A program made the translations under genes and the position numbers. The notes under the pieces were generated by a model. That model saw only the letters and a program-made list of their open reading frames with translations. It had not been told where the DNA came from and did no database searches. A stretch of DNA of 21,227 bases from Paraphysomonas bandaiensis (Eukaryota; Protista; Chrysophyceae): contig CBFFRP010000106.1 of the NCBI GenBank assembly GCA_965644295.1, forward strand, positions 1 through 21,227, given 5' to 3'. Each line of letters opens with the position of its first letter. Position 1 is the first letter of the stretch. This document shows positions 1 through 21,227 of this stretch, piece after piece.

Positions 1-1330
1 TCTGCCGCCAGTGGCGACTGGAATACACTAGTAGACAGAGTGCTCGGAGCCTCCAACTACAGTGTTGTCACAACTGACGCTACGCACATACTGGAAGAAT
101 TCTTCACCACGGGTCAATGGCACTGGAGAAGATACGATACACACCCCTCCTCACAGACCTCGGTCCCATGCTAGGAGATCTACACCACCAGCGGGACCTC
201 CATCAATACACCCTCCGACGAGATAGCATGTATGCTGCACAAACGCATCGAGACCCGCAGTATTGGACACGAATCGAAACAAGGCTCCGACACAAGCTCC
301 ATCCTCTCCGTGCCCATAACTCCTCCTAACACTTCATCTCCCTACCAGAACGTATACGCGAGACGGCATACGTATGGGACAAATCATACGCGATGGGAAG
401 AAGTCGAGCCAAAGGAAAATCACAACGGCCTCCACATAATATATACACAGACTGTGCACACCCATTAGACAACATGGTGCACATGCTTCTCAACTGCACA
501 CACCCTAACCTCACTCAAATACGTGAAGATGTTCACCAAGCACACCACAGTAAGCTCGACAAACTTCGCACACGCACGCTTCCCCATCCCTGGTTTCACA
601 CCGCCATAATCAACACCTTCAAAAGCCGCATGGAATCCGAACACCCCCTGGTTGAGAGGCCACATTACTGCCACACAACTGGCTGACGCATTCGGACGCC
701 ACATATTCAGCTCACTGCTCGAACATCAGTTCCACGCCCTCGAAAAATCCGTCACCTCTATCCTGCTCCCCCTATATAATGGAGGGCTTCGCATGCTTCG
801 AAAGAGAGGACTCAGACACCACAACGCAGACACGATACCAGTAACGCCGGTTACGACCCCAACACACTCACAGCAACGCCAGTCACAGGATACTCACCCA
901 ACACCAAAAATACTCCAACAACTCCAGGCGACATCCACCCCAAGAATTCTATCCTCTGCAAGAGTCCGAACCCGACAGAGACAAGCGCCACCACTCCGGA
1001 AACAACTCCTCCTTCCTGTAGTAGAAATCCCACCTCGACAACCAGCACCATCTCCACCACCGACTTACACTCTCATATACATCTAGTCCCAACCGCCCAC
1101 CGTATAACCCATGGCACAGGTCCGCCAGACACACTGCCCAAAGGCAACCCCCCGACTAACCTCACTACAAGGGACGGTTGCACCATCATGGTGCTCGCAG
1201 CGATGCACAAGCAGTCCCGAGACGGTTGCCGTACTAGTAGTACATAGCAAGTGCAGTTTAGTTTTAGTCTATAGATATTGTACTAGTTTCTGTACACAAC
1301 CGTTCTCATGTAATAATCAGACTTTCTTAT
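1..1330 (+). mobile_element. Degenerate 3' part of a non-LTR retrotransposon (end of RNase H region, CCHC zinc knuckle, Pro/Thr-rich tail, 3' UTR); copy A
   Basis: Frameshifted reading SAASGDWNTLVDRVLGASNY...GQWHWRR...LRRDSMY...RDPQYW...(Y)TDCAHPLDNMVHMLLNCTHPNLTQIRE...GHITATQLADAFGRHI aligns by eye with the - strand copy at 8195-9380 (AVAGEDWLEVDRLLGRQNY...GLWHWR...LRRDQRY...RAPGYW...CSDCGFRLDSLKHMCLDCTNDTITQIRE...GTITATQLEMVFGDHI). The 3' boundary is approximate. Confidence 0.75.
1171..1218 (+). ncRNA. Candidate structured RNA motif in retroelement 3' UTR, copy 1
   Basis: GGGAC-GGTTGCACCATCATGGTGCTCGCA-GCGA-TGCACAAGCA-GTCCC: closing stem GGGAC/GTCCC, GCACCA/TGGTGC hairpin, GCA-GCGA-TGC GNRA hairpin. 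Homologous to 1671-1728 and 7782-7832. Confidence 0.55.
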
Positions 1331-1670
1331 ACAGCGTTCAATTGCTCTCATATATAGCAGAACTCAACATAGTACTATACCACCCGTCAACAAAGTCGGA
1401 CTCCCACCTTTTCGTGTTGTTCTCTGGGGAGAAGTACAGGAGAGATTTTTCCGGAAAACTAACGTGAGTCACATAATATTATTATATTATAGTCAGCACA
1501 TACATCATATTGTTCTGCCCACTAATAAGTGTCTTTTGTGCTGTAGACGTCTTTGGGCCTTGAAGAATAAACAGGCATCTGGGAATGGGCCCACCTCAAG
1601 GACACCCGGGGTATTGGGCTGCCTACTGAAGTCACGCATACGGGTTAGTTCGCCTTCTTAAGGACAGAGA

Positions 1671-1728
1671 GCGAAATTGGTTGCACCTTGGTGTTTGCGG
1701 TTTGCGGAGACACACAAGCAGCTTTCGT
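1671..1728 (+). ncRNA. Candidate structured RNA motif, copy 2 (no adjacent ORF; 5'-truncated or SINE-like copy)
   Basis: GCGAAA-TTGGTTGCACCTTGGTGTTTGCGGTTTGCG-GAGA-CACACAAGCAGC-TTTCGT followed by AGCGCAGAATAGTAG. Near-identical core to the - strand copy at 7782-7832, with a TTTGCGG duplication. Confidence 0.55.
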
Positions 1729-2402
1729 AGCGCAGAATAGTAGAATATCTGAGTTAAGCACTATCTAGTTAAATAATTTTGCTATACTACTTCTGACACT
1801 TTCACGTCTATTGCTAATAATCAGGCATTCACTACTTTTACCCATGTAGGGGTATAATACTTACTTTAATAGACGTGTCGAAGAGTCTATGATGTCTACA
1901 AGTCAATTGTGGATCAGTTTGCGGCCCTATAAACTTCACTAACTTCCTAATCAAGCGCCGTACTTATAGATACATCTTATAACATCCTCTCTAAACCAAT
2001 GCACATGCTGCAGCTCAAGAATCTCCTGACGTACTGTCTCATTGTGCCCTCTTATCACCAAGAGGAGGTACATAGCAGTGAAACGAGAGACAGCCTGGAT
2101 GAAGCGGAGGGAGATTAACAGCAATCATATGTGGATTATTCCTCTGGAGAAGAAAACGACAAGAAATGAATGATAATTCAAAGACTGATGAGGAGGAGGA
2201 GATCGACTATGATGAAGCGCATCAATCTGTAGACGACGAGAAGAGTATCTACTACTAAACGTCTTGGTAATGATAACTAAACTAAAAATAAAATAAACAC
2301 GGAACTAAAAGTGTAATGGTGCTATTGCAAATGGTCTCAATCCAACATGTTTTGATATGAGTGGATCATTATTCTCGCAGTTATCAGTAAAAACGTTATT
2401 TA

Positions 2403-2975
2403 ACAACACTATTCGACGATTCTTTGGAAAGATATTTTTAAGACTATGCCATCCTCAAAGCGATTTTCACAGGAGATAAGAGCAATCGAGTTGAAGTAAT
2501 ATTAACAGGTAGCAAGAAGAATGGGAAAACGACTCTAATGAAGCACACAGACTAAATTTTTATTCTCTGCACAGACAAAATATGTGCGGTGTACTTCGAG
2601 TGTGTTGGACACCAATCCATGAATATTACACCGAAGGAGTTACTTCTGAATCGGGCTCAAGAACTTTCGCTTTTGGATGAAGTAGTAATCGAATTCTTCA
2701 GCAAAAGAAGCTTATTACTGACACTCTAAGTATAATTCTCCCTGTGGTGTTCTACGACGAAGCTGACCTTTAGTAGGCTAAGCAAAAAAATTTCACATTG
2801 TATTGGCTTAATAGAGATGCTTGTCTGGCAGTGCATGGAAGCTAGTGGCTTTGGTAATTATATAAAGGGCTTCACAGCATCCTCTGAATACCACCGGTTC
2901 AAAGAGAACCAGAATTTGAACCCTCAGAAATTCTCGGAGTTGCCATTTTATCCGCTCACCGATCCAGGTGATTCC
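2403..2975 (+). pseudogene. P-loop NTPase (AAA+/STAND-like) pseudogene fragment
   Basis: Walker A VEVILTGSKKNGKTTLMK (GxxxxGKT at 2508-2531). After stops and a frameshift, Walker B-like PVVFYDEAD at 2741-2767. Multiple in-frame stops. Not present in the supplied ORF track. Confidence 0.6.
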
Positions 2976-3404
2976 TCTCATGCCTAACCCAATATGGTAA
3001 GAACATTTCTCCGGATGATGCCTCTAGTCGTTTAGCTTGGTGGGCAAGGGCCGATTCGTGCCGGAACAAGGAAATCTGCACCACGTCCTACCCGCTTTCA
3101 TCCAGTGTGTGTATCCGCTGTGGAAGTATGAGCAGTCAACATGATCTGTCCTAGGAGATAGAGTACCCGTTGTGAAGGCCCATGCAGAACTCTTGGAGTG
3201 AACTGCATGTCGTGTATGTATCTCACAGCGTATATATATGGTATACGGTATACAGCAGGATACCATGCCATTGTAGTTATTCATACAGCGCATTCTCGAT
3301 ATATCGCGGTATGTATATCGCGATACCCTTTTATATCGCGGATTTTGGTCCAGGACACTTCATCACACATAATTCTAATGGAAAACTGAGGCCATTTTCT
3401 GTTA

Positions 3405-3528
3405 CAAGGGTAAGCATTTTTTTGGTAAGCATTCCTTACCAAAATACGCCGAAAATCAATTTCTGTTTGCCCTGGTAAGCATTTTCGGGGTAAGTTTTTG
3501 AAAATGCTTACCAAAATGCTTACCCTGG
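3405..3528. mobile_element. ~124-bp MITE-like inverted-repeat element nested in the pogo-like element
   Basis: Left CAAGGGTAAGCATTTTTTTGGTAAGCATT versus right end reverse complement CCAGGGTAAGCATTTTGGTAAGCATTTT. Internal GGTAAGCATT motif repeated in both orientations. No clear TSD. Confidence 0.6.
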
Positions 3529-4392
3529 AGAGAGAGTGGGGGGGTAAAATTTGGAATCCTTACCTGAGGATGAAATGTAATGATGCGCAAGAGTCTTTTT
3601 CTCTCATCGAAGGACGTCTGCTCATAAGAAGGATATATATATGTCTCATGATATTCAATGTCGCGTGCTGCAAGAACTTCGAATACCTGTTATTGAGAAA
3701 TTTCTTCGTTACATACCCTCAATAACAGGAGGCTCATGAGACCATTCTGGAGTCATTCCCTGAGAATGCATGGAGTTCACAAATATCAACACTTGGACAC
3801 CTGATTGAAACTTGGGCAAAAGCCGAAAAAGGCGGAGACATGTTTGGCACTGAAGAGTACACTAAGGAAAATGCACTGGGGGATATTTACCTCAAACGAA
3901 TGCGTAGTATGACTTTGGAGTGAACATCGAAGTGCAGGTAATTGAAAGCTGAATTGAAGCATTGAGTATAAGTTTACCTTCTGTTGTTAAGTTAATACTT
4001 CTCGTATAATGTCAAACTTTGATACAGAGGACGAGTATGAGAAAACTTTTAATTGGTTAAGCAGTAGGGTTTCATTATCAAGTGACATTATAAGACAAGT
4101 ACTAATAATTCAATTTACGGAAACCTTAATGCGTGTAAGAACCAGCTATCAGGTTATTTTATGCTGTATGAGCTCTCTATTGTATATGCTTAAGTTTGTA
4201 CATACCATCTGTACAACATAGGTTGAATATTGCTATGTTCTATATTGTTATTCATAATTTTCACTCTATCGTGTTCATTACTAACACTCTAATAATCACA
4301 ACATTGTTTTACTATTATAAAGATCAATTCTTTATTATAATGAGACATAATGAAGAACAAATAAGAGCAGTATCACTGCACTTCAGCAGTCA

Positions 4393-4671
4393 ATGTCTTT
4401 AGAGGACGAAGGCGATGACGATGACGAGGATGATTGTATTAACACCAATGGAAATGATAGTGCTATTACTGCTGTGCAAGCCGACAATGCTGTTTTAATG
4501 CTACTCGATTATGCTACCCAGGAGGGGCATTCAACAGCGCATATTGAGCTCCTCAGAAAAGTGCAGAATAATATTCATACAGAAAGGCACAAGAATCATT
4601 CTAAGGTACAAACTTCTCTGCATCAGTTTTTTTCAGCACGTACTAAAGGTTCTGAAGTCCATGAAATTTAA
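4393..4671 (+). pseudogene. C-terminal remnant of a pogo-like transposase (acidic stretch + PIP box)
   Basis: Acidic EDEGDDDDEDD, helical segment, then QTSLHQFF (QxxLxxFF PCNA-interacting motif, 4609-4632) near the C-terminus, as in pogo/Tigger transposases. Lies inside the TIRs. No DDE core visible. Confidence 0.65.
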
Positions 4672-5188
4672 TAATTTTATCTTATTGTTAGCTAGGAATG
4701 TAGTAAGTGTGTTAAGAAATTGAATACCATAAATTCCATAAATAATGATATATTAGTAACTTATTTCACAAATTCTTTGCATGTGCCATTCAGTACAAGG
4801 AGTACTATGCTATACAGACACGACATTGTGGATATATTGCACAGTCTTAAGCTCCTTAAACTTGTTCTCTATGACTTTGCGGAATACAGTGCTGTATTTT
4901 ACTATTAAATTGTATATCGCGATATTGCGATATATCGCGATTTCCTCTCCAGGACACTTTCCGCGATATATCGAGAATGCGCTGTAGTGTATTATTCAGT
5001 ATTCTATTCTGTATTTCACATCTGCGTGCTGGAACTGCTCTGTATGTATGCCGTGTCATCTCTCCATATGGATAAAACCATACTAAACATCGACCTTGCG
5101 CACCATCTATAGCTGTTTTGCACAGTGTATCCAGGTCTAGGGTCCGTGGTTTCCGTGGGATCACTTAACAGGCAGTGCCTTTCGTTGG

Positions 5189-6962
5189 ATGGACGACTCG
5201 AAGGGATTCGTCTGCGATGAGAAGTATCAAAACATAATTGCAGAGTTAGAGAGTCGAGGTTGGGTAAAGTTAGAAGATGGTCCCCATGTCCCTCCAAACT
5301 GTTCTCTAATTTGGAAAAATTTGTCTAAAATTAATTTCGGTCTCACTTTGGGACGATACGTAAATCATATCAGAGGAATTCACCACTTGAGTAACAAAGT
5401 GAGTACGATCATTCCCACAAATTAAGCTGTAATGTCTTACAGTCATATCTGGCATACCACTTGGATGGATCGGGTAGCGCCTACATACAACCACCAACAT
5501 GGAGTTCTTCGTACCATGACATATCAGTATTGATAGGTTGGTAGAGGAATTTTGGGTTATCTTCTGAGTGTTTCTCATTAGGCTGGTTGATGCTCGATAG
5601 GCTAGTCCAAGTAGCAAGAAGTATCTGCTCTGGGACTGGTGTTTACAGTGATAAAGATACACTACGAACGGAATTATCAATTGGTGAGAATGTTTGTGAA
5701 GTGCTGTGTCGGCAAGGGGAATGGCGTCACGTAGGTGCAGCATCGCAGTATAAAACTCTTCTTTCAATCTTGCGCAACTACAATTCTCGTGTTAGTGAAG
5801 ATAGTGCAACTTCCCAGTGCGAGGAGTTTTTGGAGAAATTAGACCTGCATCAGGAATGGCGATCGTGGGGAGGGGATCGTGGACTATGGATTATTAAACC
5901 TGTGGCACAGGCATGCGGTAGAGACATTCAGGTGTTACGCGGTATTAGGGAAATTTTACAAGCAGTGGAGACTATGGGCTTCAAGTGTGTAGTACAGAAG
6001 TACATAGAACACCCATTACTTTTACGAAATGCTCAAAAATTTGACATTCGTCAATGGGTTTTAGTAACGAGTCTGAATCCGCTGGTGGTGTATGGGTTTT
6101 CCGAGTGCTATCTACGGTTGTCCTCAAAGCCGTTTTCTCTAGAAGACAGCAGTCTGAACGTTCCTCTGGTCCATCTTTGCAACCAAAGCATACAACTCTC
6201 TGGAGAGATAGAAAGGGAATGCGTGAATGCTAGCTGCCCGACGATGATGAGCCAAGCTGAGTTCTGCGGGGCTCTTTCTGATTTGGGAAAGGGGGCCACT
6301 TTCGAAGATATTATCCTCCCTCAAATCAAGCACATTACAATTGATGCTGTTTCTTCCTGTAGGGAAGAAATGAATAGAACAAGTCGAGGTTTTGAGTGGT
6401 TAGGATTGGATTTAATGGTGACAGAGAATCTAAAAGTTATACTTCTAGAGGTTAATGTTTCTCCGGACACGACCAGCAGCACTCCAAGTAAGCAATTCTT
6501 GTTTACTGTTGATCATTTCTAATTTCAGATTGTGCCCTAGTTACGGGACGACTTGTCCGTCAGGCTACCTCGGATCTTTTTGATGTCTTGTTTTTGGAAG
6601 GGGCGGCGGACGGCCCCAGGGAGACAATGCGGTCAGTGCAAGTGGCTGCCAATACAGGACGACGGTGGCCCAGCGGAGGTATTCTTGGAGAGGGTGTCGC
6701 AAGTATTGTAACCCCTGCAGCTAAAAAATTGGATGCTGTTATGGATCCTCTGTGGGAGCTGTGGTATGTGGGGAAGGAAGAAACACAACGTGATATGAAG
6801 AGAATTTCTGCCAGCAAGATGGAAAGTGTTGGACGCTTGCGCTTAGGTAAAAATTCTATATCAGAAGATTTGGTGCGATCTTTTGGAGAAATAACAAACC
6901 GTGTACTAGATATAGTTGACGGTGTAGATAGTATAGAGTTTGATGATTATGATGAAATATAA
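5189..6962 (+). CDS. Tubulin-tyrosine ligase-like protein, TTLL3/TTLL8 (glycylase)-like; exons 5189-5398, 5443-5536, 5582-6487, 6541-6962
   Basis: ATP-grasp TTL motifs WIIKP...CGRDI, VVQKYIEHPLLL, KFDIRQWVLVTSLNPL, YLRLSSKPFSL, VHLCNQSIQ, FEWLGLDLM, LLEVNVSP. Three GT-AG introns (44, 45, 53 nt) join the ORF pieces in frame. Subfamily assignment is by motif resemblance. Confidence 0.9.
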
Positions 6963-7699
6963 TAGTGATTTCTTCTCTTTGGATTATATCCACCAAACAT
7001 ATTTGAAACTATTGTTGACGGTCGAAGAATGCCACACCAGACATAGTATGATAAAAGATGCTTGATGGATGTGAAGGTTTTCTTTATTCTCGGATATAAT
7101 ACATTAGAAGGAAAAAATGTATGTATCTTGTTTGTGGTCGAGGCCTCCAACATCCAACCCCATATCCTTAATGTCAATCGGGCTGTACGCTGTTCCTACC
7201 AGTAGGGTTCGTAATGCTTAACACTGTACACTTTTGGTACGCGTACTAAAGCCAATCTTATTACCTCTTCGTATCTTATATAGTCGTATGTTTATTAGTC
7301 ACTACCATTTCATTCACGTAATTATTTGATTATAACGGCTATGCTGTGATTTAGTATTCTTGATACTCGCAAGAAATTTCCCACGTTTTTGACGTGCATT
7401 CCTTGTTAAAACTAGCTAGTTACTAGAGTGCTAATAAATGGTTCTCTGTATTTGTATTGATATATTATATTATTGACTAGTATTGAAAATTAATATATAT
7501 TATAATATATACAGAGAGTATGTATACTATATTGTACAATATTTACACTGTCGTGCTGCTTACTAGATAATATTATATATCTATCAATTCATTATTATAA
7601 TTCGTGATCAATTATTATTAAATTCCAGCTTTCAAACAGCAATATATTGAAAGTCTTTTTATTTAGCAATAGGCGTTAAAAACTCGTTCCGATATAGTG

Positions 7700-9385
7700 G
7701 CTAGTTGAATGCTAGATCTACTAGTTAGACCTCTACCCATAACTAATCAGCACAAATTCTATTATCCTACTATTTAGCGCTACAGAAGCTGCTTGTGCGT
7801 CGCCGCAAGCACCAAGGTGCAACCACTTCCGTTCTTAATGTGGTTTGTGAGTTCGCCCTGCTCGTGTGTCTGAGGACTCACTGGCGCGTGTTGTCCGGGG
7901 GTCTCCCCTTGGGATAAGGTTCCACCTGGCTCTGAGGTACAGGGTTCTGTATTAAGGTCCTGAGTGTACCGAGCACTAGATGTGTGTACTGAGAGGTTGA
8001 TGGCGTGGTGGAATGTGGCGTTGACGTCATGCACCGTCTGGGCGTTGGGCATAGGTGGAGTTGCCGGAGACGGCGTCGCCGTTGTCTAGGGCCTGTTGGT
8101 TTCATACGGTCCGGTGCTATGGTCCTTTGTGTATGGTTGGTGGTGTTCATATGTGCGGTGGGCGGTGTTCCAGTCTCGGTTCGTCTGTGGATTCCTAGTA
8201 ATCGTAGCACCCTTGGACGTTTCCATTTCTGTCTGTGTCATTTGGACGCGGCCACGGTAGTAGCCTTGGGGGACCTTTCTGTAGGGTAACGTATCTTCTA
8301 CTTCGATCTTGGATCATTAGCTTTGCGGCAGCGAAAAGCGGTAGAAGTAATTTGATGATCGCTGATTCGATGCTGCGCAGTCCTTGGGATGTCAGTGACT
8401 CATGGATGTGATCTCCAAAAACCATTTCAAGCTGTGTAGCTGTGATGGTACCCGTCCAAAATCTCTCCACCTGTGGCACGGAAGGGTTCCAGGCCCTGCT
8501 GGAGAGTCGCTGGAGTACAGTGGTGGTCCATTGGGGTAGTTCCGGATTTCTCATTTCTTCTAGAAGCGCGTTTTTGTGGCTGTGAAATGCAGACTCCCTT
8601 ATCTGCGTTATGGTGTCATTTGTACAGTCTAGACACATGTGCTTGAGTGAGTCTAGTCTAAATCCACAGTCAGAACATGCGGCTTTAGCCATGTCGAGTC
8701 CGTGTTTGGTTTTCGCCCGGTTTCTTCCTATGCTGAAGGATTTGTCCCATGTCAGTGCTGCATTGAGTACTCGCTGGCGCAGGTGGGAACTCACTTTGTC
8801 CTTTGATGGTCCACCATCTGCTTGCGCCAGCAGTTTGCGCGGAAGTAGTGCTCCGCTGTCTTTCCAGTATCCAGGAGCCCGGTCAGGATTGTGACCGTAG
8901 CGTTGGTCTCGTCGGAGAGCTGTGTAGGCCTCCAGCGTCCGTTGATTACGGAGGGATTAGAAATCCGTGAGCAGGGGGCTAGTAGTGCGATACGGCCGTG
9001 GTTCCCCAGTTAGGCGCCAGTGCCATAAACCCTCGGTGAGTATTCTTTCAATGGCTTGGTCCACTTCTATGTGTTACAGACAGTGTAATTTTGTCGTCCG
9101 AGTAGTCGATCTACCTCAAGCCAGTCCTCTCCTGCTACTGCGTCGGCAATTTAAATTCCTTTGTCTTCATATGTCCATTCAGACTCATCAGAGGTATACG
9201 TCGTTCGGGGTGTGATCGGACCCATGCTACTGTCCTTGTACAATCGTTGTTTGCTGCAATGCTTTCGAGCAGTACACCTTCTTTGGCACGATGCCCCAGT
9301 GCCCGACGTCTGGTGGAAAGTGCTTCGTGTGTGCGTATGCAGACGGACTTACAGTCCGTGTTTCAAACAGCAAAACGCAACTATT
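7700..9385 (-). mobile_element. 5'-truncated degenerate non-LTR retrotransposon with RNase H and CCHC knuckle; copy B
   Basis: - strand translation across frameshifts gives RNase H motifs NTDCKS...VAWVRSHPERR...KGI*IADAVA (~9130-9365), then CSDCGFRLDSLKHMCLDC (CCHC) and VERFWTGTIT in ORF 8195-8794. Homologous to 1-1330. Boundaries approximate. Confidence 0.8.
7782..7832 (-). ncRNA. Candidate structured RNA motif in retroelement 3' UTR, copy 3
   Basis: - strand ACGGAAG-TGGTTGCACCTTGGTGCTTGCG-GCGA-CGCACAAGCAG-CTTCTGT followed by AGCGCTAAATAGTAG. Closing stem ACGGAAG/CTTCTGT and GCG-GCGA-CGC hairpin. Confidence 0.55.
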
Positions 9386-15926: not shown

Positions 15927-17024
15927 ACTTAACTAGCGCTGAGGAGTTACTATTTTTGGTTTCGCTATAGCTCATGCTCACTGTGGTAGTTGATTTCTTA
16001 CTATTATGATATATATGTTCATCGTGTTGCTCATTTTAATAGAGTAGATACGTTATGATGCTGTGGTATGCCCCTTCTTGGGTCACTTCTCATGCTTCAA
16101 CACACCTCCATAGTACTATTACTCATCAGCAACAGTATATATACCATATGATCACTTACCATCACCAGTTATATACAGAGGACGGTACCGTGGTGCGGCA
16201 GGGATGCGATGGCTTCCATAACTCTGTGGTGCTAAGGCCATCGACTAATCGGGGGTCAATGTGGTAAGCCATGTGTGGTGTCCACATGTAGGTTCCTCCC
16301 CTACGGTCAAGGTCGCTCAACCATTGGATTGTGTCCTCGAGTACTCCAATCCTCGAGTACTCGAAGTCTTGTTCATACGCTAGTTTGAGGAGTTTTGAGA
16401 CTACCGAGTTGAATGCTTTTTGGAAGTCCCATAATGTGCAGAGCTTTGTGTTACCCGTGAATTTTTCGAGTTAGATGCGGTTATATCCCGGAGGATGATG
16501 GCTGTATCCGTGCCATGACGCCAGCGCCGTGCTGTGCAGGGTGGAATACGCCGTCGCCTTCCCATATCTACAGCATTCAGTTGGTAGCGTCCGTAGTCTA
16601 TCCCTAATTCTTTCTTCAAAGTACGTTGTGTGCAACAAAGCAATATTAAGGTTCACAACATGTTGAGCAAAATGTTAAATTCAGTGCAATGTCCCCAATT
16701 TTAACAGTAATCACTGAAATGTTGAATTTATATTGAAAATGTCTGCTTATTATAATTGTTCGCTGTTCTAGCTAGAGTGTCTGTGTGGCGGTGTTGCGAA
16801 GTTTCATGTGGGGTTTGCGGTTGGGTGGGGGAGAAAGGGTAGGTTTGTCTCTCTTCCTTGTCTTTGACCATATGCTGAGCCCCCCTTTGTATTTAGGGGG
16901 CGGCGGAGCAGTGTAGCTATGGGTTTGTCGGCGCGGAGGGGTGTGGAGTTGTCATTGCTTTGTTGTCGATATTTGAGAGCCATGTGGGCTATATGTTGTC
17001 TCTGCAATCGTATCATTGCGCTAT

Positions 17025-17060
17025 CGAACACACACACCGAGGCGGAGGGACGCCCGGGCG
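17025..17060 (+). repeat. GC-rich dispersed direct repeat, partner at 17668-17703
   Basis: TCGAACACACACACCGAGGCGGAGGGACGCCCGGGCG versus TCGATACACACACCAAGGCAAAGGGACGGCCGGGCG. Confidence 0.7.
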
Positions 17061-18409
17061 CTTGTGCCGCTCTAGGAATTCTTCCTATGCCAGAAGGGGC
17101 CTTCTGTCGTCTCGTTTTTTATTACTCTTTCCTTATTACTCTAAGTTTTTAAGTTATTATAATATTAATAATAAAATACTAAACTTTAAATTTTAAGTAA
17201 TACTATATATTTTATTACTAACTTTTAAATACCAAACTTAAAATACTAAAAACTCTTATATATTATTATTTAACTTTTATAACTAACTTTTAAACACTCC
17301 TATATAATATATATTATACTAATATGAAATGAATTATGGCTCTTGGCTCTATATATTGTGGCTTTCTGGCTTTTATGGATTTACTAATAAAAAGTTAATT
17401 TTTTTAATAGAACCGTTTGTAATATAAAATTCAGTTCCAAAAGTGCCGTTGTATATGATGTTGTCGATATAGTGTAGTCTATGGTATAGAAGTGGCTTTG
17501 TTGGTTAAAAGTGCAGTGTGCAGTGTGTAGTGTGCTCTGTGTAAATAAATAGTTTTCAAAAACGGCTTCTCTTCTTTAAGGTATGATAAAAGATACTTAA
17601 ACTTATATTCTGTTATTGAATCTAAGCTCTAATCGCAATCTACTTTACTGGACGAACACAGTGGAACTCGATACACACACCAAGGCAAAGGGACGGCCGG
17701 GCGTTATTCACTGAAGCAGTCACAACAACTAAATGTTATTCAATTATAAGAATTATTATTGCCTCAGCACGCTATAATATTATTACGTTTAATACTATGA
17801 ATTTTAGATTAACAGGTGTATTCGCCATCACGGCGTCGTGTGAATTGCATGAGGTCGTGTTTTGTGGGTGAGGTTTACTATGTTTCCCAGCATTGGGCCG
17901 AGGTCCGTATATGGAGGAATTGATCAAACCATCGCCAATGGTGCCAATAATACGTATGCCTAACAGTGAGAAAGTCTTCAAAATGAGGCGAGTAATGTCC
18001 GCTGTCGTGACCTCGTTTCCACTTGCTTCCAGTTTCCACTCGTAGCCGCATCTGCGATGAAGATACCGTGGTCTGGGAAGGACCGGGTTGCTTTGTTTGC
18101 ATTTTCCGGCGTTTCGGGTGGGAACTGACCCAGGTAATCTGTCTGAGTTTGCTTGTGAGTGCAGGGATAGATTCATAGTCTTGTGAAGTTTATCTAATCA
18201 TATTTCGATTTGTCATTGGTGAGGAGGGCGATGACATGTATCTCGTTGCTGGAAAGGCCTACGCCTACGCAGCGTCGCACGGGTATAATACTATTACTGT
18301 TATTACTTATAAAAAGTCGTTTGCAAGAACGTAAGAGTGTGGACTGTCTAACAGAGTTGCAAATATCATCCACTGTAGTGCTATCAGACATTTTAGATCG
18401 CAAGATTAT

Positions 18410-19943: not shown

Positions 19944-21227
19944 TCAAATTAATAACAGCCGAGTCAGTCTATCACCAGCCCAATCTGAATCACTGAACAC
20001 ATGTAAGTCGAACTCACTCCCACTGAATCTGATGCCCTCATCAATTGTTCCACGCAAATATTTCAATAAGTGAATCGCCAGTTTGCACGATGCATATGTC
20101 GGACAACTACTAAATCGAGACAATAACCCCACTGCATAAGCCAGATCAGGTCTAGTATGCATTGCTAGATACAACACTGCTCCAATAATTTGCCGATACG
20201 GAAATGAGTCAACCCACTGCTTCTGCTCCTCCGTAAGTTCACGTTCCTCTGCCAACAGATCCTGAACATTAGTAGGTAGTGGGGCCTCCTTATTCTTACT
20301 ACTCTTTCCCATAACTGAGCTGAATTTCTTGATAATATTCTTAGCATACTCAGATTGATCTAACATATACCAATTTTCTCCTCTGGTTATCCTGATGTTC
20401 AGAAATCGCTTACACACTCCCAGATCATGCATCTCGAATGTTTCACAGAACCTACGCTTTACGCTTTCCAAGTAAGTCAGATCAGCGGATGCAATTATGA
20501 TATCATCAACATATATCAATAATAAATGCAGTTTTCCGTTACTCCATCGCATATACAAACACGTATCCAAAATACACGGAGTAAAATGCAATGATTTAAT
20601 AAACTTGTCAATATGTTTATTCCACTGTCGCGGTGAAGATCGCAGTCCATACAATGCCTTGATTAGTTGAAAACACCATCCAGCTAGTAATTCCTCATCT
20701 GGTGGAGGTGCCATATACACGTCATCCTCCAGATCTGCATAGCAAAATGCGGATGATACATCTAATTGATGCACATGCATCTGTAACATAAACGCAATCG
20801 CTAACACTAGTCTAATGGTTATACCCTTAACCACTGGAGCGAAAGTGGACGGCTCCTCCTCCTTCTTCTCTTGGAGATTTCCTAATGCCACTAGCCGAGC
20901 CTTGTACTTTACTATATTCCCTAGTATGTCTCGCTTCACCGTATGCACATATTTCGCTCTAACTAATTTCACTCCGCTTGGAATTTTCACGATCTTCAAG
21001 ACACGTCTTTTCAGCAATGATGTCTTCTCCACCATTCGAGCTTTTCTCCATTGTTGATACTGTGGAGATCTCTCTGCCTCGGCATATGAATTTGGTATCT
21101 TGATATCTTCTGTCTCTGCATGGTTAAGATCAATATTATGCGCATCCGGTACTTCAACCATATTAATCTCTCCTAAAACTGACGCGTTTGCCAGTCTCCG
21201 CTGCAGCCGTTTGCGTGTGACCACGTG
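19944..21227 (-). mobile_element. Ty1/copia LTR retrotransposon pol fragment (RT and start of RNase H), 3'-truncated
   Basis: IPNSYAEA...W, KYKARLVALG, TFAPV, HQLDVSSAF, L.KALYGLRSSPRQW, IYVDDII, HDLG...FL.I, PYRQIIGAVLYLAMHTRPDLAYAVG.LSRF, FSDSDWAGD. ORF runs to the window edge. Confidence 0.95.

What the first reader, a model, noticed from the sequence alone, without database searches (positions are those of the whole stretch)
1171..7832. Three-copy covarying structured RNA motif at the 3' end of an RNase H-type non-LTR retroelement family
Seen: a core GGTTGCACC-N2-5-GGTGYTYGCR-GNRA-YRCACAAGCAG occurs at 1171-1218 (+), 1671-1728 (+) and 7782-7832 (-). The closing stem differs in sequence in every copy yet always pairs (GGGAC/GTCCC; GCGAAA/TTTCGT; ACGGAAG/CTTCTGT). 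The GNRA hairpin shows a compensatory change (GCA-GCGA-TGC vs GCG-GCGA-CGC; GAGA loop with one stem mismatch in copy 2). The GCACC/GGTGY hairpin tolerates a loop-length change. Copies 1 and 3 lie downstream of homologous but strongly diverged ORFs, so the motif is better conserved than its surroundings. Overlapping pairings (GCACC/GGTGC, TGCTTG/CAAGCA, GGTTGC/GCAGY) are partly exclusive, hinting at a junction, pseudoknot or switch. Known: LINE 3' stem-loops act as RT recognition signals and retroelements often carry self-cleaving ribozymes. I cannot match this motif to hammerhead, HDV, twister or pistol consensus. Inference: an undescribed cis-acting RNA (template recognition, 3'-end protection or cleavage).
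Basis: partly seen in the sequence, partly recalled or inferred. Interest (0 to 1): 0.8.

Follow-up and report, generated by a model that had tools for sequence, protein, structure and literature searches.

The report
Conserved three-way-junction RNA in LINE 3'UTRs
The three repeats are copies of a folded RNA element just after the protein-coding part of a family of jumping genes (LINEs) and their small parasites (SINEs); it occurs over 1000 times in this genome and seems to mark the smallest piece that can still be copied.

Summary
The motif sits at the three stated places with 0 chance matches expected, and occurs at least 1018 times in the 62.5-Mb genome.

It is not at the element's 3' end. 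It opens the 3'UTR, with its closing stem 10-47 nt after the ORF2 stop codon and 113-180 nt before a second conserved terminal block.

It occurs in at least five LINE lineages and two SINE-like families. Window copy 2 lies in a SINE.

The fold is a closing stem around two adjacent hairpins. The closing stem and the second hairpin co-vary inside the genome.

Six remote relatives from other assemblies (about 30% ORF2 identity) have the same architecture 10-32 nt after their stop codons, with different stem sequences.

There is no Rfam hit.

New here: the 5' ends of truncated insertions, validated by target-site duplications, pile up about tenfold on the 5' strand of the closing stem and at the first core base.

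Best reading: a docking element for the element's own protein that defines the minimal mobile module. An exonuclease-blocking role is a live rival.

Other first-stage notes on this genome (for example s1-443475) had seen SINEs with LINE 3'UTR tails, but not this motif.

The parts
1..1332 (+). 3' fragment of a LINE (lineage C), cut by the contig start. It holds decayed ORF2 C-terminal coding sequence and the 3'UTR.
   Evidence: tblastn with the lineage-A ORF2 C-terminus hits 1-882 at 38-43% identity. The 3' end is marked by GACTTTCTTATAC at 1320-1332.
1157..1159 (+). Position of the ORF2 stop codon (TAA) in lineage C, 11 nt before the closing stem.
   Evidence: Sequence read. The same TAA position is seen in 76 or so canonical lineage-C copies and in L203.
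1171..1218 (+). Motif copy 1. Closing stem GGGAC/GTCCC, hairpin GCACC-ATCAT-GGTGC, hairpin GCA-GCGA-TGC, junction ACA.
   Evidence: (MFE -20.2 kcal/mol, z -2.1).
1315..1332 (+). Conserved 3'-terminal block of the lineage-C element.
1381..1835 (+). SINE-like non-coding element (type D). It has a head of about 290 nt joined to the LINE-type 3' module that starts about 11 nt before the core. The 5' limit is approximate.
   Evidence: Alignment of ten type-D copies. The end CATTCACTAC is at 1826-1835.
1671..1728 (+). Motif copy 2, decayed. Closing stem GCGAAA/TTTCGT, with a 7-nt duplication between the two hairpins.
   Evidence: 60.9 bits.
7644..9335 (-). 5'-truncated LINE (lineage A). It holds the ORF2 C-terminal region with frameshifts, and the 3'UTR.
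   Evidence: tblastn 9335-7881 at 44-85% identity to the L013 ORF. Reads and contigs stop matching at 7642-7644.
7878..7880 (-). ORF2 stop codon of lineage A, 56 nt before the core (47 nt before the closing stem).
7782..7832 (-). Motif copy 3. Closing stem ACGGAAGU/GCUUCUGU, hairpin GCAC-CUUG-GUGC, hairpin UGCG-GCGA-CGCA, junction CA.
   Evidence: (86.8 bits).
7644..7660 (-). Conserved 3'-terminal block of the lineage-A element.

Best explanation
The motif is a compact three-way-junction RNA: a closing stem enclosing two adjacent hairpins, with an invariant junction around GCACA. It opens the 3'UTR of a clade of RNase H-bearing LINEs and of the SINE-like elements that borrow their 3' module.

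Shown:
- the fold and its conservation across lineages;
- its fixed place just after the ORF2 stop codon;
- its sharing by LINEs and SINEs, whose homology starts at the motif's 5' edge;
- a hotspot of insertion 5' ends at that same edge.

Inferred:
- The junction is the docking site where the element's own ORF2 protein (reverse transcriptase) or ribonucleoprotein assembles on the RNA that has just been translated.
- The conserved terminal block 113-180 nt downstream is where reverse transcription starts.
- Together they make the minimal unit that can be mobilised.
- The folded or protein-bound junction also acts as a barrier, so shortened RNAs or cDNAs end at its 5' edge and are inserted as copies of about 230 nt.
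For: - Abundance: 1018 exact matches against 0 for the reversed control.
- Position: the stop codon lies 56-57 nt (lineage A) or 19 nt (lineage C) before the core. In six remote relatives the closing stem starts 10-15 nt (32 in one) after the stop.
- Structure inside the genome: 7 of 8 closing-stem pairs show changes on both sides. The apical pair of hairpin 2 is GC in 74 copies and AU in 23. The covariation score beats 500/500 shuffles and all slid controls.
- Structure across lineages: ten representatives all give the shape [] as unconstrained MFE, against 4-10% of their shuffles. Closing stems and hairpin 1 have unrelated sequences.
- L207 against the window motif shows G-C to C-G, U.G to U-A and A-U to C-G.
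- Selection: the core is 32/36 identical between lineages whose ORF2 C-termini are 41% identical and whose neighbouring UTR is 25% identical.
- LINE/SINE sharing from about -11 (family break points at -4 to -18).
- 5'-end hotspot, per 100 listed copies: about 14 ends in -11..-6, about 3 at base 0, about 6 in the 22 nt upstream, at most 2 in the last 21 nt of the motif, about 4 in 22 nt of the tail. This is repeated in lineage C.
- Sixteen cases have their own target-site duplications of 10-19 bp.
- Precedent: stringent LINEs need a cognate 3' stem-loop bound by ORF2 (PMC4176376). R2 protein affinity for its 3'UTR depends on two stem-loops (PMC11194090).
Against: - No protein binding was tested.
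- In studied stringent LINEs each family recognises its own variable loop. Here the core is nearly invariant across lineages with about 40% ORF2 identity, which fits a host factor or an intrinsic RNA function as well.
- The motif is far from the site where reverse transcription must start.
- Predicted stability is ordinary (z -0.2 to -2.1).
- A reverse transcriptase moving 3' to 5' should stall at the 3' side of a block, not the 5' side. The hotspot therefore needs an extra assumption: protection of the RNA from 5'-to-3' decay, or of the cDNA end from resection.
- Boundaries of the remote examples were chosen by eye.
- The copy samples were read by hand from listings of 100. One of them excluded canonical B and C copies through its anchor letter.
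Confidence: 0.5

Rival explanations
1. The junction is an exoribonuclease-resistant RNA, comparable in role to the xrRNAs at the start of flavivirus and some plant-virus 3'UTRs. It stops 5'-to-3' decay, so a stable RNA of about 230 nt containing only the 3'UTR accumulates. That RNA is then reverse-transcribed, and it seeds SINEs by template switching at its 5' end.
For: - It is a three-way junction at the very start of the 3'UTR.
- Insertion 5' ends spread over the 5' strand of the closing stem (-11..-6), with a second sharp site at the first core base. This is what stalling of an enzyme arriving from the 5' side, then partial breaching, would give.
- There is no excess on the 3' side or inside the motif.
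- The extra bases at the junctions are a, c, t, tt and never G, which is weak evidence for uncapped ends.
- SINE heads join the module at the same point.
- Some copies abut another element's 3' end exactly at base 0 or -11.
Against: - No ring-closing pseudoknot could be found. The 5' flanks and hairpin loops show no conserved complement.
- No Rfam xrRNA family matches.
- Ordinary predicted stability.
- No RNA ends could be read, because only contigs were available.
- A bound protein would give the same footprint.
Confidence: 0.22
2. The motif is, or directs, a site-specific RNA cleavage just 5' of itself. This could be a new self-cleaving ribozyme with the cut at its 5' edge (as in HDV-like or hatchet ribozymes), or a substrate for a host endonuclease such as RNase P.
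For: - There is a sharp 5' end at the first core base in eleven insertions that each have their own target-site duplication (so arose separately), from three lineages.
- The core is invariant, as in catalytic RNAs.
- Retroelements of this genome were read by other first-stage notes as carrying ribozyme heads (s1-443475).
Against: - Cutting the 3'UTR off the coding RNA would harm the LINE.
- Most ends are spread over six bases at the stem base, not at one bond.
- No ribozyme family matches even at E up to 10.
- Threading the HDV-like fold fails, because no partner exists for a P2 helix.
- ARAGORN finds no tRNA-like gene.
- The remote relatives keep the architecture but not the core sequence, apart from GCACA.
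Confidence: 0.07
3. The structure serves translation or RNA surveillance at the ORF2 stop codon. It might shield a long 3'UTR without poly-A from nonsense-mediated decay, or modulate termination or readthrough.
For: The spacing of 10-15 nt between the stop codon and the closing stem is nearly fixed in eight lineages, about the reach of a terminating ribosome. There is no poly-A tail.
Against: - In lineage A the spacing is 47 nt.
- SINE copies without any ORF keep the motif intact.
- The reading frame across the motif differs between lineages A and C, so no conserved readthrough product exists (sequences).
Confidence: 0.08
4. There is no RNA function. The shared core reflects recent exchange of a 3' module among families, or a DNA-level signal.
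For: Most copies are neutral decayed insertions. Within the genome the core stems never co-vary. One abundant subfamily carries an uncompensated change, GGTCGC.
Against: - The flanks inside the same module have diverged almost completely while the core has not.
- The closing-stem strands changed on both sides in at least four ways.
- Relatives at 30% protein identity in other assemblies keep the architecture with new stem sequences.
Confidence: 0.04

Closest known systems
3' tail stem-loop of stringent-type LINEs and their partner SINEs (eel UnaL2/UnaSINE1, zebrafish ZfL2; PMC1636434, PMC4176376)
   Same: A conserved structured RNA in the LINE 3'UTR, shared with non-autonomous SINEs. It implies recognition of the template by the element's own ORF2 protein. 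There is no poly-A tail.
   Different: Here it is a three-way junction, not a single hairpin. It lies at the start of the UTR, next to the stop codon and 113-180 nt from the 3' end, not beside the terminal repeats. Its core is nearly invariant between LINE lineages instead of family-specific. Its 5' edge is a hotspot of insertion ends.
R2 retrotransposon 3'UTR protein-binding core (PMC11194090, PMC10499050)
   Same: A folded multi-helix 3'UTR RNA is bound by the element protein. In R2, affinity depends on two stem-loops, and the determinants of binding differ from those of initiation. That parallels the two conserved blocks found here.
   Different: There is no sequence or Rfam similarity. R2 is site-specific, with a restriction-like endonuclease and no RNase H. 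Binding is experimental for R2 and only inferred here.
Exoribonuclease-resistant RNAs (xrRNA) of flaviviruses and plant viruses
   Same: A three-way junction at the start of a 3'UTR. Shortened molecules have 5' ends at the 5' base of the structure, seen here only as genomic retrocopies.
   Different: No pseudoknot or ring closure was detectable. There is no sequence match or Rfam hit. Resistance is untested, and the host element is a cellular retrotransposon. I found no paper linking xrRNAs to non-LTR elements.
Ribozymes of non-LTR elements (HDV-like in R2/L1Tc, PMC3185411; twister variants in Schistosoma, PMC8501958)
   Same: Small conserved structured RNAs in LINE and SINE transcripts that define an RNA 5' end.
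   Different: Those lie at the element's 5' end and have proven cleavage. This motif lies in the 3'UTR, matches none of their models, and cleavage was not shown.

Membership tests
Stringent-type LINE 3' tail recognition stem-loop | Lies in the 3'UTR of a LINE without a poly-A tail | tested here: met
   The stop codon lies 19-57 nt upstream of the core. The elements end in a fixed block without poly-A.
Stringent-type LINE 3' tail recognition stem-loop | The same sequence is shared by partner SINEs | tested here: met
   Non-coding families B and D carry the module from about -11 to the 3' end.
Stringent-type LINE 3' tail recognition stem-loop | A single stem-loop directly next to the 3' terminal repeats | tested here: not met
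   It is a three-way junction 113-180 nt from the end.
Stringent-type LINE 3' tail recognition stem-loop | Specific binding by the cognate ORF2 protein, required for mobilisation | not testable with these tools
   Needs binding and mobilisation assays.
R2-type 3'UTR binding core | Match to the Rfam R2 element model or sequence similarity | tested here: not met
   No Rfam match at the gathering threshold or at E up to 10.
xrRNA (flavivirus or plant-virus classes) | Three-way junction or stem-loop at the start of a 3'UTR | tested here: met
xrRNA (flavivirus or plant-virus classes) | Pseudoknot that closes a ring around the 5' end | tested here: inconclusive
   By inspection of ten lineages, no conserved complement was seen between 5' flank, loops and downstream sequence. 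No tool for tertiary contacts was available.
xrRNA (flavivirus or plant-virus classes) | Accumulation of RNAs whose 5' end is at the structure, and Xrn1 resistance in vitro | not testable with these tools
   Only indirect evidence: genomic insertions start there. The public runs were contigs without end information.
xrRNA (flavivirus or plant-virus classes) | Match to the Rfam xrRNA models | tested here: not met
Known self-cleaving ribozymes (hammerhead, HDV-like, twister, twister-sister, pistol, hatchet, hairpin) | Match to the family covariance model | tested here: not met
   No hit even at E up to 10 with permissive filters. The shared string CGUUAAAUAGU, which I recalled from memory of one pistol sequence, gave no pistol hit.
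tRNA-derived SINE or tRNA-like structure | Cloverleaf detectable by ARAGORN; A and B boxes | tested here: not met
   No tRNA in the window. GGTTGCACC is two bases short of the B-box consensus (own knowledge).

The most novel reading that the evidence does not exclude
A cellular retrotransposon carries an exonuclease-blocking (xrRNA-like) three-way junction at the start of its 3'UTR. Decay of the LINE RNA from the 5' side halts there and leaves a stable RNA holding only the 3'UTR. This RNA is still a template for the element's reverse transcriptase, which produces the many copies of about 230 nt. By template switching at the RNA's fixed 5' end it also gives birth to SINE families. That would be the first xrRNA-type element outside viruses with a role in transposon evolution.
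Probability: 0.22. Interest if true: 0.85.

Novelty: new variant of a known kind. Interest (0 to 1): 0.6.

Why it matters
How non-poly-A ("stringent") LINEs pick their own RNA, and how SINEs arise from them, is known in detail for only a few animal elements. Here a protist LINE clade offers several things at once:
- a small RNA fold with good comparative support that could be added to RNA family databases;
- a two-part 3'UTR design, with a junction next to the stop codon and a terminal block;
- more than a thousand natural insertions whose 5' ends point to the junction as the boundary of the mobile unit.

If the boundary reflects nuclease stalling, it would link viral xrRNA biology to transposons and give a concrete mechanism for SINE birth. 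Practically, the motif is a sharp marker for annotating these repeats in marine stramenopile genomes and metatranscriptomes.

Tried and rejected
- **Metagenome scan.** My pattern was too loose.
- **Viral contigs.** No match.
- **CM search of the genome.** It returned only the 150 best, near-identical copies, so it gave no diversity. Later sampling relied on printed pattern matches.
- **Alternative long hairpin TGCTT/AAGCA.** It was suggested by one double change in L040. It is rejected because 18 of 19 copies with the first change keep the original partner.
- **HDV-like threading from the first core base.** This fails because there is no P2 partner. The pistol-like string after the motif gave no pistol hit.
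- **HDV-like heads of the type-D SINEs.** Other first-stage notes proposed these. No Rfam hit at E up to 1. Not pursued further.
- **RNA ends.** All 22 public runs were Logan contigs. Read laying showed the motif in poly-A marine metatranscriptome contigs and showed the family break points, but no starts or ends.
- **Stop-codon readthrough.** Rejected because the frames across the motif differ between lineages and SINEs keep the motif.
- **Ribosome footprint as the cause of the hotspot.** Rejected because the stop codon is 47 nt from the closing stem in lineage A, yet the hotspot stays at the stem.
- **Pfam on the ORF2 C-terminal 481 aa.** No family.
- **L204/L205 and L210.** No convincing junction. 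The contig ends early, or the fold is unclear.
Full report
**1. Observation**

The three sites exist as described. The pattern GGTTGCACC-N(2-8)-GGTGYTYGC matches exactly three times in the window and never in 100 shuffles.

In the whole assembly (62.5 Mb, 669 contigs; the window is the start of contig 106) the same pattern matches 1018 times. The reversed control matches none. This is therefore not a three-copy curiosity but one of the most abundant repeats of the genome.

Rfam gives no match, either at gathering thresholds on the window or at E up to 10 on the motif regions and on six further loci. ARAGORN finds no tRNA.

**2. Context**

I fetched 82 loci of 3 kb around copies. The motif has several unrelated upstream contexts:
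- coding LINE 3' ends of at least five lineages: A with sub-lineages, C, E, an F type and an H type;
- two non-coding SINE-like families, B and D.

In copies with an open frame the ORF stops 56-57 nt (lineage A) or 19 nt (lineage C) before the first core base. The ORF shows an RNase H-like end, a Cys/His knuckle and a basic tail, but has no Pfam hit.

All elements continue 113-180 nt past the motif. They end in a second conserved block resembling AATAATCAGAC(A/T)TTC plus a few bases, without poly-A, and are flanked by target-site duplications of 10-19 bp. Between the two blocks the sequence and length vary freely.

In the window:
- Copy 1 belongs to a lineage-C LINE fragment (1-1332).
- Copy 3 belongs to a 5'-truncated lineage-A LINE (7644-9335, minus strand).
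- Copy 2 belongs to a type-D SINE of about 455 nt (about 1381-1835).

The two LINE lineages are 39-41% identical in the ORF2 C-terminal region. Yet 32 of 36 core bases are the same. Only 2/9 and 2/8 bases of the closing-stem strands, and 25% of the middle UTR, are the same.

**3. Structure inside the genome**

The minimum-energy fold of every lineage is a closing stem, a 3-bp extension, and two adjacent hairpins (GCACC/GGUGC and UGCG-GNRA-CGCA).

On 123 copies aligned to a covariance model:
- Seven of eight closing-stem pairs show changes on both sides.
- The apical pair of the second hairpin is G-C in 74 copies and A-U in 23.
- The covariation score exceeds all 500 shuffles and all slid controls.

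The loop of the second hairpin is always GNRA in the main lineages: GCGA, GUGA or GCAA. The first hairpin and the 3-bp extension never vary inside this genome, so they could not be tested there.

Predicted stability is unremarkable, with z from -0.2 to -2.1.

Of 19 copies with C in place of the first T of CTTGC, 18 keep the A that would pair with it.

**4. Structure across lineages**

An exhaustive HMMER search with the 481-aa ORF2 C-terminus found 114 relatives. Longer ones carry RVT_1 and Exo_endo_phos. Their nearest Atlas clusters carry RVT_1 plus RNase_H, in fungi and diatoms.

I fetched the DNA of ten of them.
- Two are lineage-C and lineage-E copies from metagenomes (L203, L212).
- In six remote ones (L207 from NCBI assembly GCA_020049755.1; L208, L209, L211, L214, L215 from ENA metagenomes; about 30% protein identity), a closing stem enclosing two adjacent hairpins begins 10-15 nt after the stop codon (32 nt in L209).
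- The other two (L210, L213), and the two identical contigs L204/L205 fetched for a hit of the earlier word search, showed no clear junction or ended before the 3'UTR.

Features of the remote examples:
- The closing stems are unrelated in sequence: GAACUCUU, GGGUCGACAC, UCUGAGU, GAGGU, GGGUGGGC, GGGUGAGC.
- Hairpin 1 changes by paired substitutions: GCACC/GGUGC, GCCC/GGGC, AGCAC/GUGCU, GCGC/GCGC and longer forms.
- Hairpin 2 keeps the form (U)GC(A/G)-loop-(U/C)GC(A).
- The junction after hairpin 2 is (C)ACA in nine of ten.

L207 aligns to the window motif with G-C to C-G and U.G to U-A in the 3-bp extension, and A-U to C-G in hairpin 1. These are the compensatory changes that were missing inside the genome.

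All ten representatives give the abstract shape [], which only 4-10% of their dinucleotide shuffles give.

Caveats: I chose the boundaries of the remote segments by eye. The ten are perhaps five or six independent lineages.

Terminal-block-like sequences are also present in L207, L208 and L215.

**5. A hotspot of insertion 5' ends**

Many copies have unrelated sequence right up to the motif. Where both ends were in a locus, sixteen such copies have their own target-site duplication, so each is a separate insertion.
- Eleven start at the first core base or one base before it (L006, L034, L053, L054, L058, L059, L061, L065, L070, L072, L079). They come from three lineages. Often one or two extra bases (a, c, t, tt) are present, never G.
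- Five start 7-10 nt upstream, at the base of the closing stem (L005, L018, L021, L028, L060).

Those loci were partly selected for odd flanks. I therefore read unselected listings of 100 copies each:

| Region | Ends per 100 listed copies |
|---|---|
| -33..-12 (22 nt upstream) | about 6 |
| -11..-6 (base of closing stem) | about 14 |
| -5..-1 | about 3 |
| Base 0 (first core base) | about 3 |
| Last 21 nt of the motif | at most 2 (the other oddities are internal deletions) |
| 22 nt of the tail | about 4 |

- The anchor letter excluded canonical B and C copies.
- A lineage-C sample without that bias gave about 76 canonical copies and no ends in -18..-11. It gave about five ends in -10..-5, one at -2 and four at base 0. 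In addition, four H-type copies all begin at their closing stem.

The density of ends is thus roughly ten times background on the 5' strand of the closing stem and at the first core base.

The LINE/SINE homology starts at the same place, about -11. Contigs of public runs diverge between families at -4 to -18.

**6. Interpretation**

Shown: a conserved three-way junction placed just after the ORF2 stop codon across a LINE clade. It is kept by non-coding SINE partners and bounds the mobile 3' module.

Inferred: it is the docking site for the element's own protein on the freshly translated RNA, and the terminal block serves initiation. This parallels the stringent LINE tail (PMC4176376, PMC1636434) and the R2 3'UTR core, where affinity depends on two stem-loops and binding and initiation determinants differ (PMC11194090).

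The hotspot lies on the 5' side, where a reverse transcriptase coming from the 3' end would not be expected to stop. It therefore points to RNAs, or resected cDNAs, whose end is fixed by the folded or protein-bound junction.

The most interesting rival is that the RNA itself blocks 5'-to-3' exonucleases like a viral xrRNA. I found no pseudoknot and no paper linking xrRNAs to non-LTR elements. A ribozyme, a role in termination or surveillance, and absence of function are less likely (see Rival explanations).

**7. Limits**

- No RNA ends could be read, because only contigs were available.
It is marine, and other first-stage notes call it a stramenopile.
- The reverse transcriptase clade was not placed in a phylogeny.
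- Counts come from hand-read samples.

Noticed in passing
window 5587-6522 (+): An ORF of 311 aa with a strong tubulin-tyrosine ligase (TTL) domain (E 3e-52). It is an ordinary host gene lying between the repeats.
   Followed up: partly
window 19944-21224 (-): An ORF of 426 aa with a Copia-type reverse transcriptase (RVT_2, E 7e-56). It is a different retroelement class at the window's end.
   Followed up: partly
window 16725-18177 (-): A weak match to the LINE RNase H-like region at 18017-18177. About 1.3 kb downstream there is a terminal-block-like end (AATAAGCAGACATTTTCAATATA, about 16728-16750). No junction motif is detectable in between. This may be a decayed relative, or a relative without the motif.
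   Followed up: partly
window 1381-1670 (+); L017, L030, L034, L063, L066, L081: The head of the type-D SINE is about 290 nt. It starts near CCCTCAACAAAGTCGGACTCGCACC and contains repeated units like GGCATCCGGGAATGGGCCCACC. Other first-stage notes call such heads HDV-like ribozymes. Rfam gave no HDV-like hit at E up to 1.
   Followed up: partly
G000 contig 37, about 33.9-45.7 kb (seen in listings only): Four copies of a motif-deletion variant (GGTGCTGCTTCTGTAGCG) recur with a period of about 3.9 kb. This is a tandem array containing an element copy.
   Followed up: no
G000 contigs 127, 128, 272, 278, 578 (positions 35-126): Several contigs begin a few dozen bases before a motif copy. The assembly therefore tends to break inside this repeat family.
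   Followed up: no
L011 about 1675-1800; G000 C35:200158; C59:56648: In some places a 5'-shortened module follows directly on the 3' end of another element. Examples are at base 0, at -11 and at about +66. These are either nested insertions or template-switch chimeras.
   Followed up: partly
G000 C199:548597-548631 (listing): One lineage-C copy starts with the first eight core bases duplicated (GGTTGCAC GGTTGCACC). This may be slippage at a template end.
   Followed up: no
about nine of the 123 copies aligned from L001-L082 (A2): A subfamily carries GGTCGCACC (T to C in the 3-bp extension) without a compensating change. That pair is therefore not strictly required, or the subfamily is dead.
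   Followed up: partly
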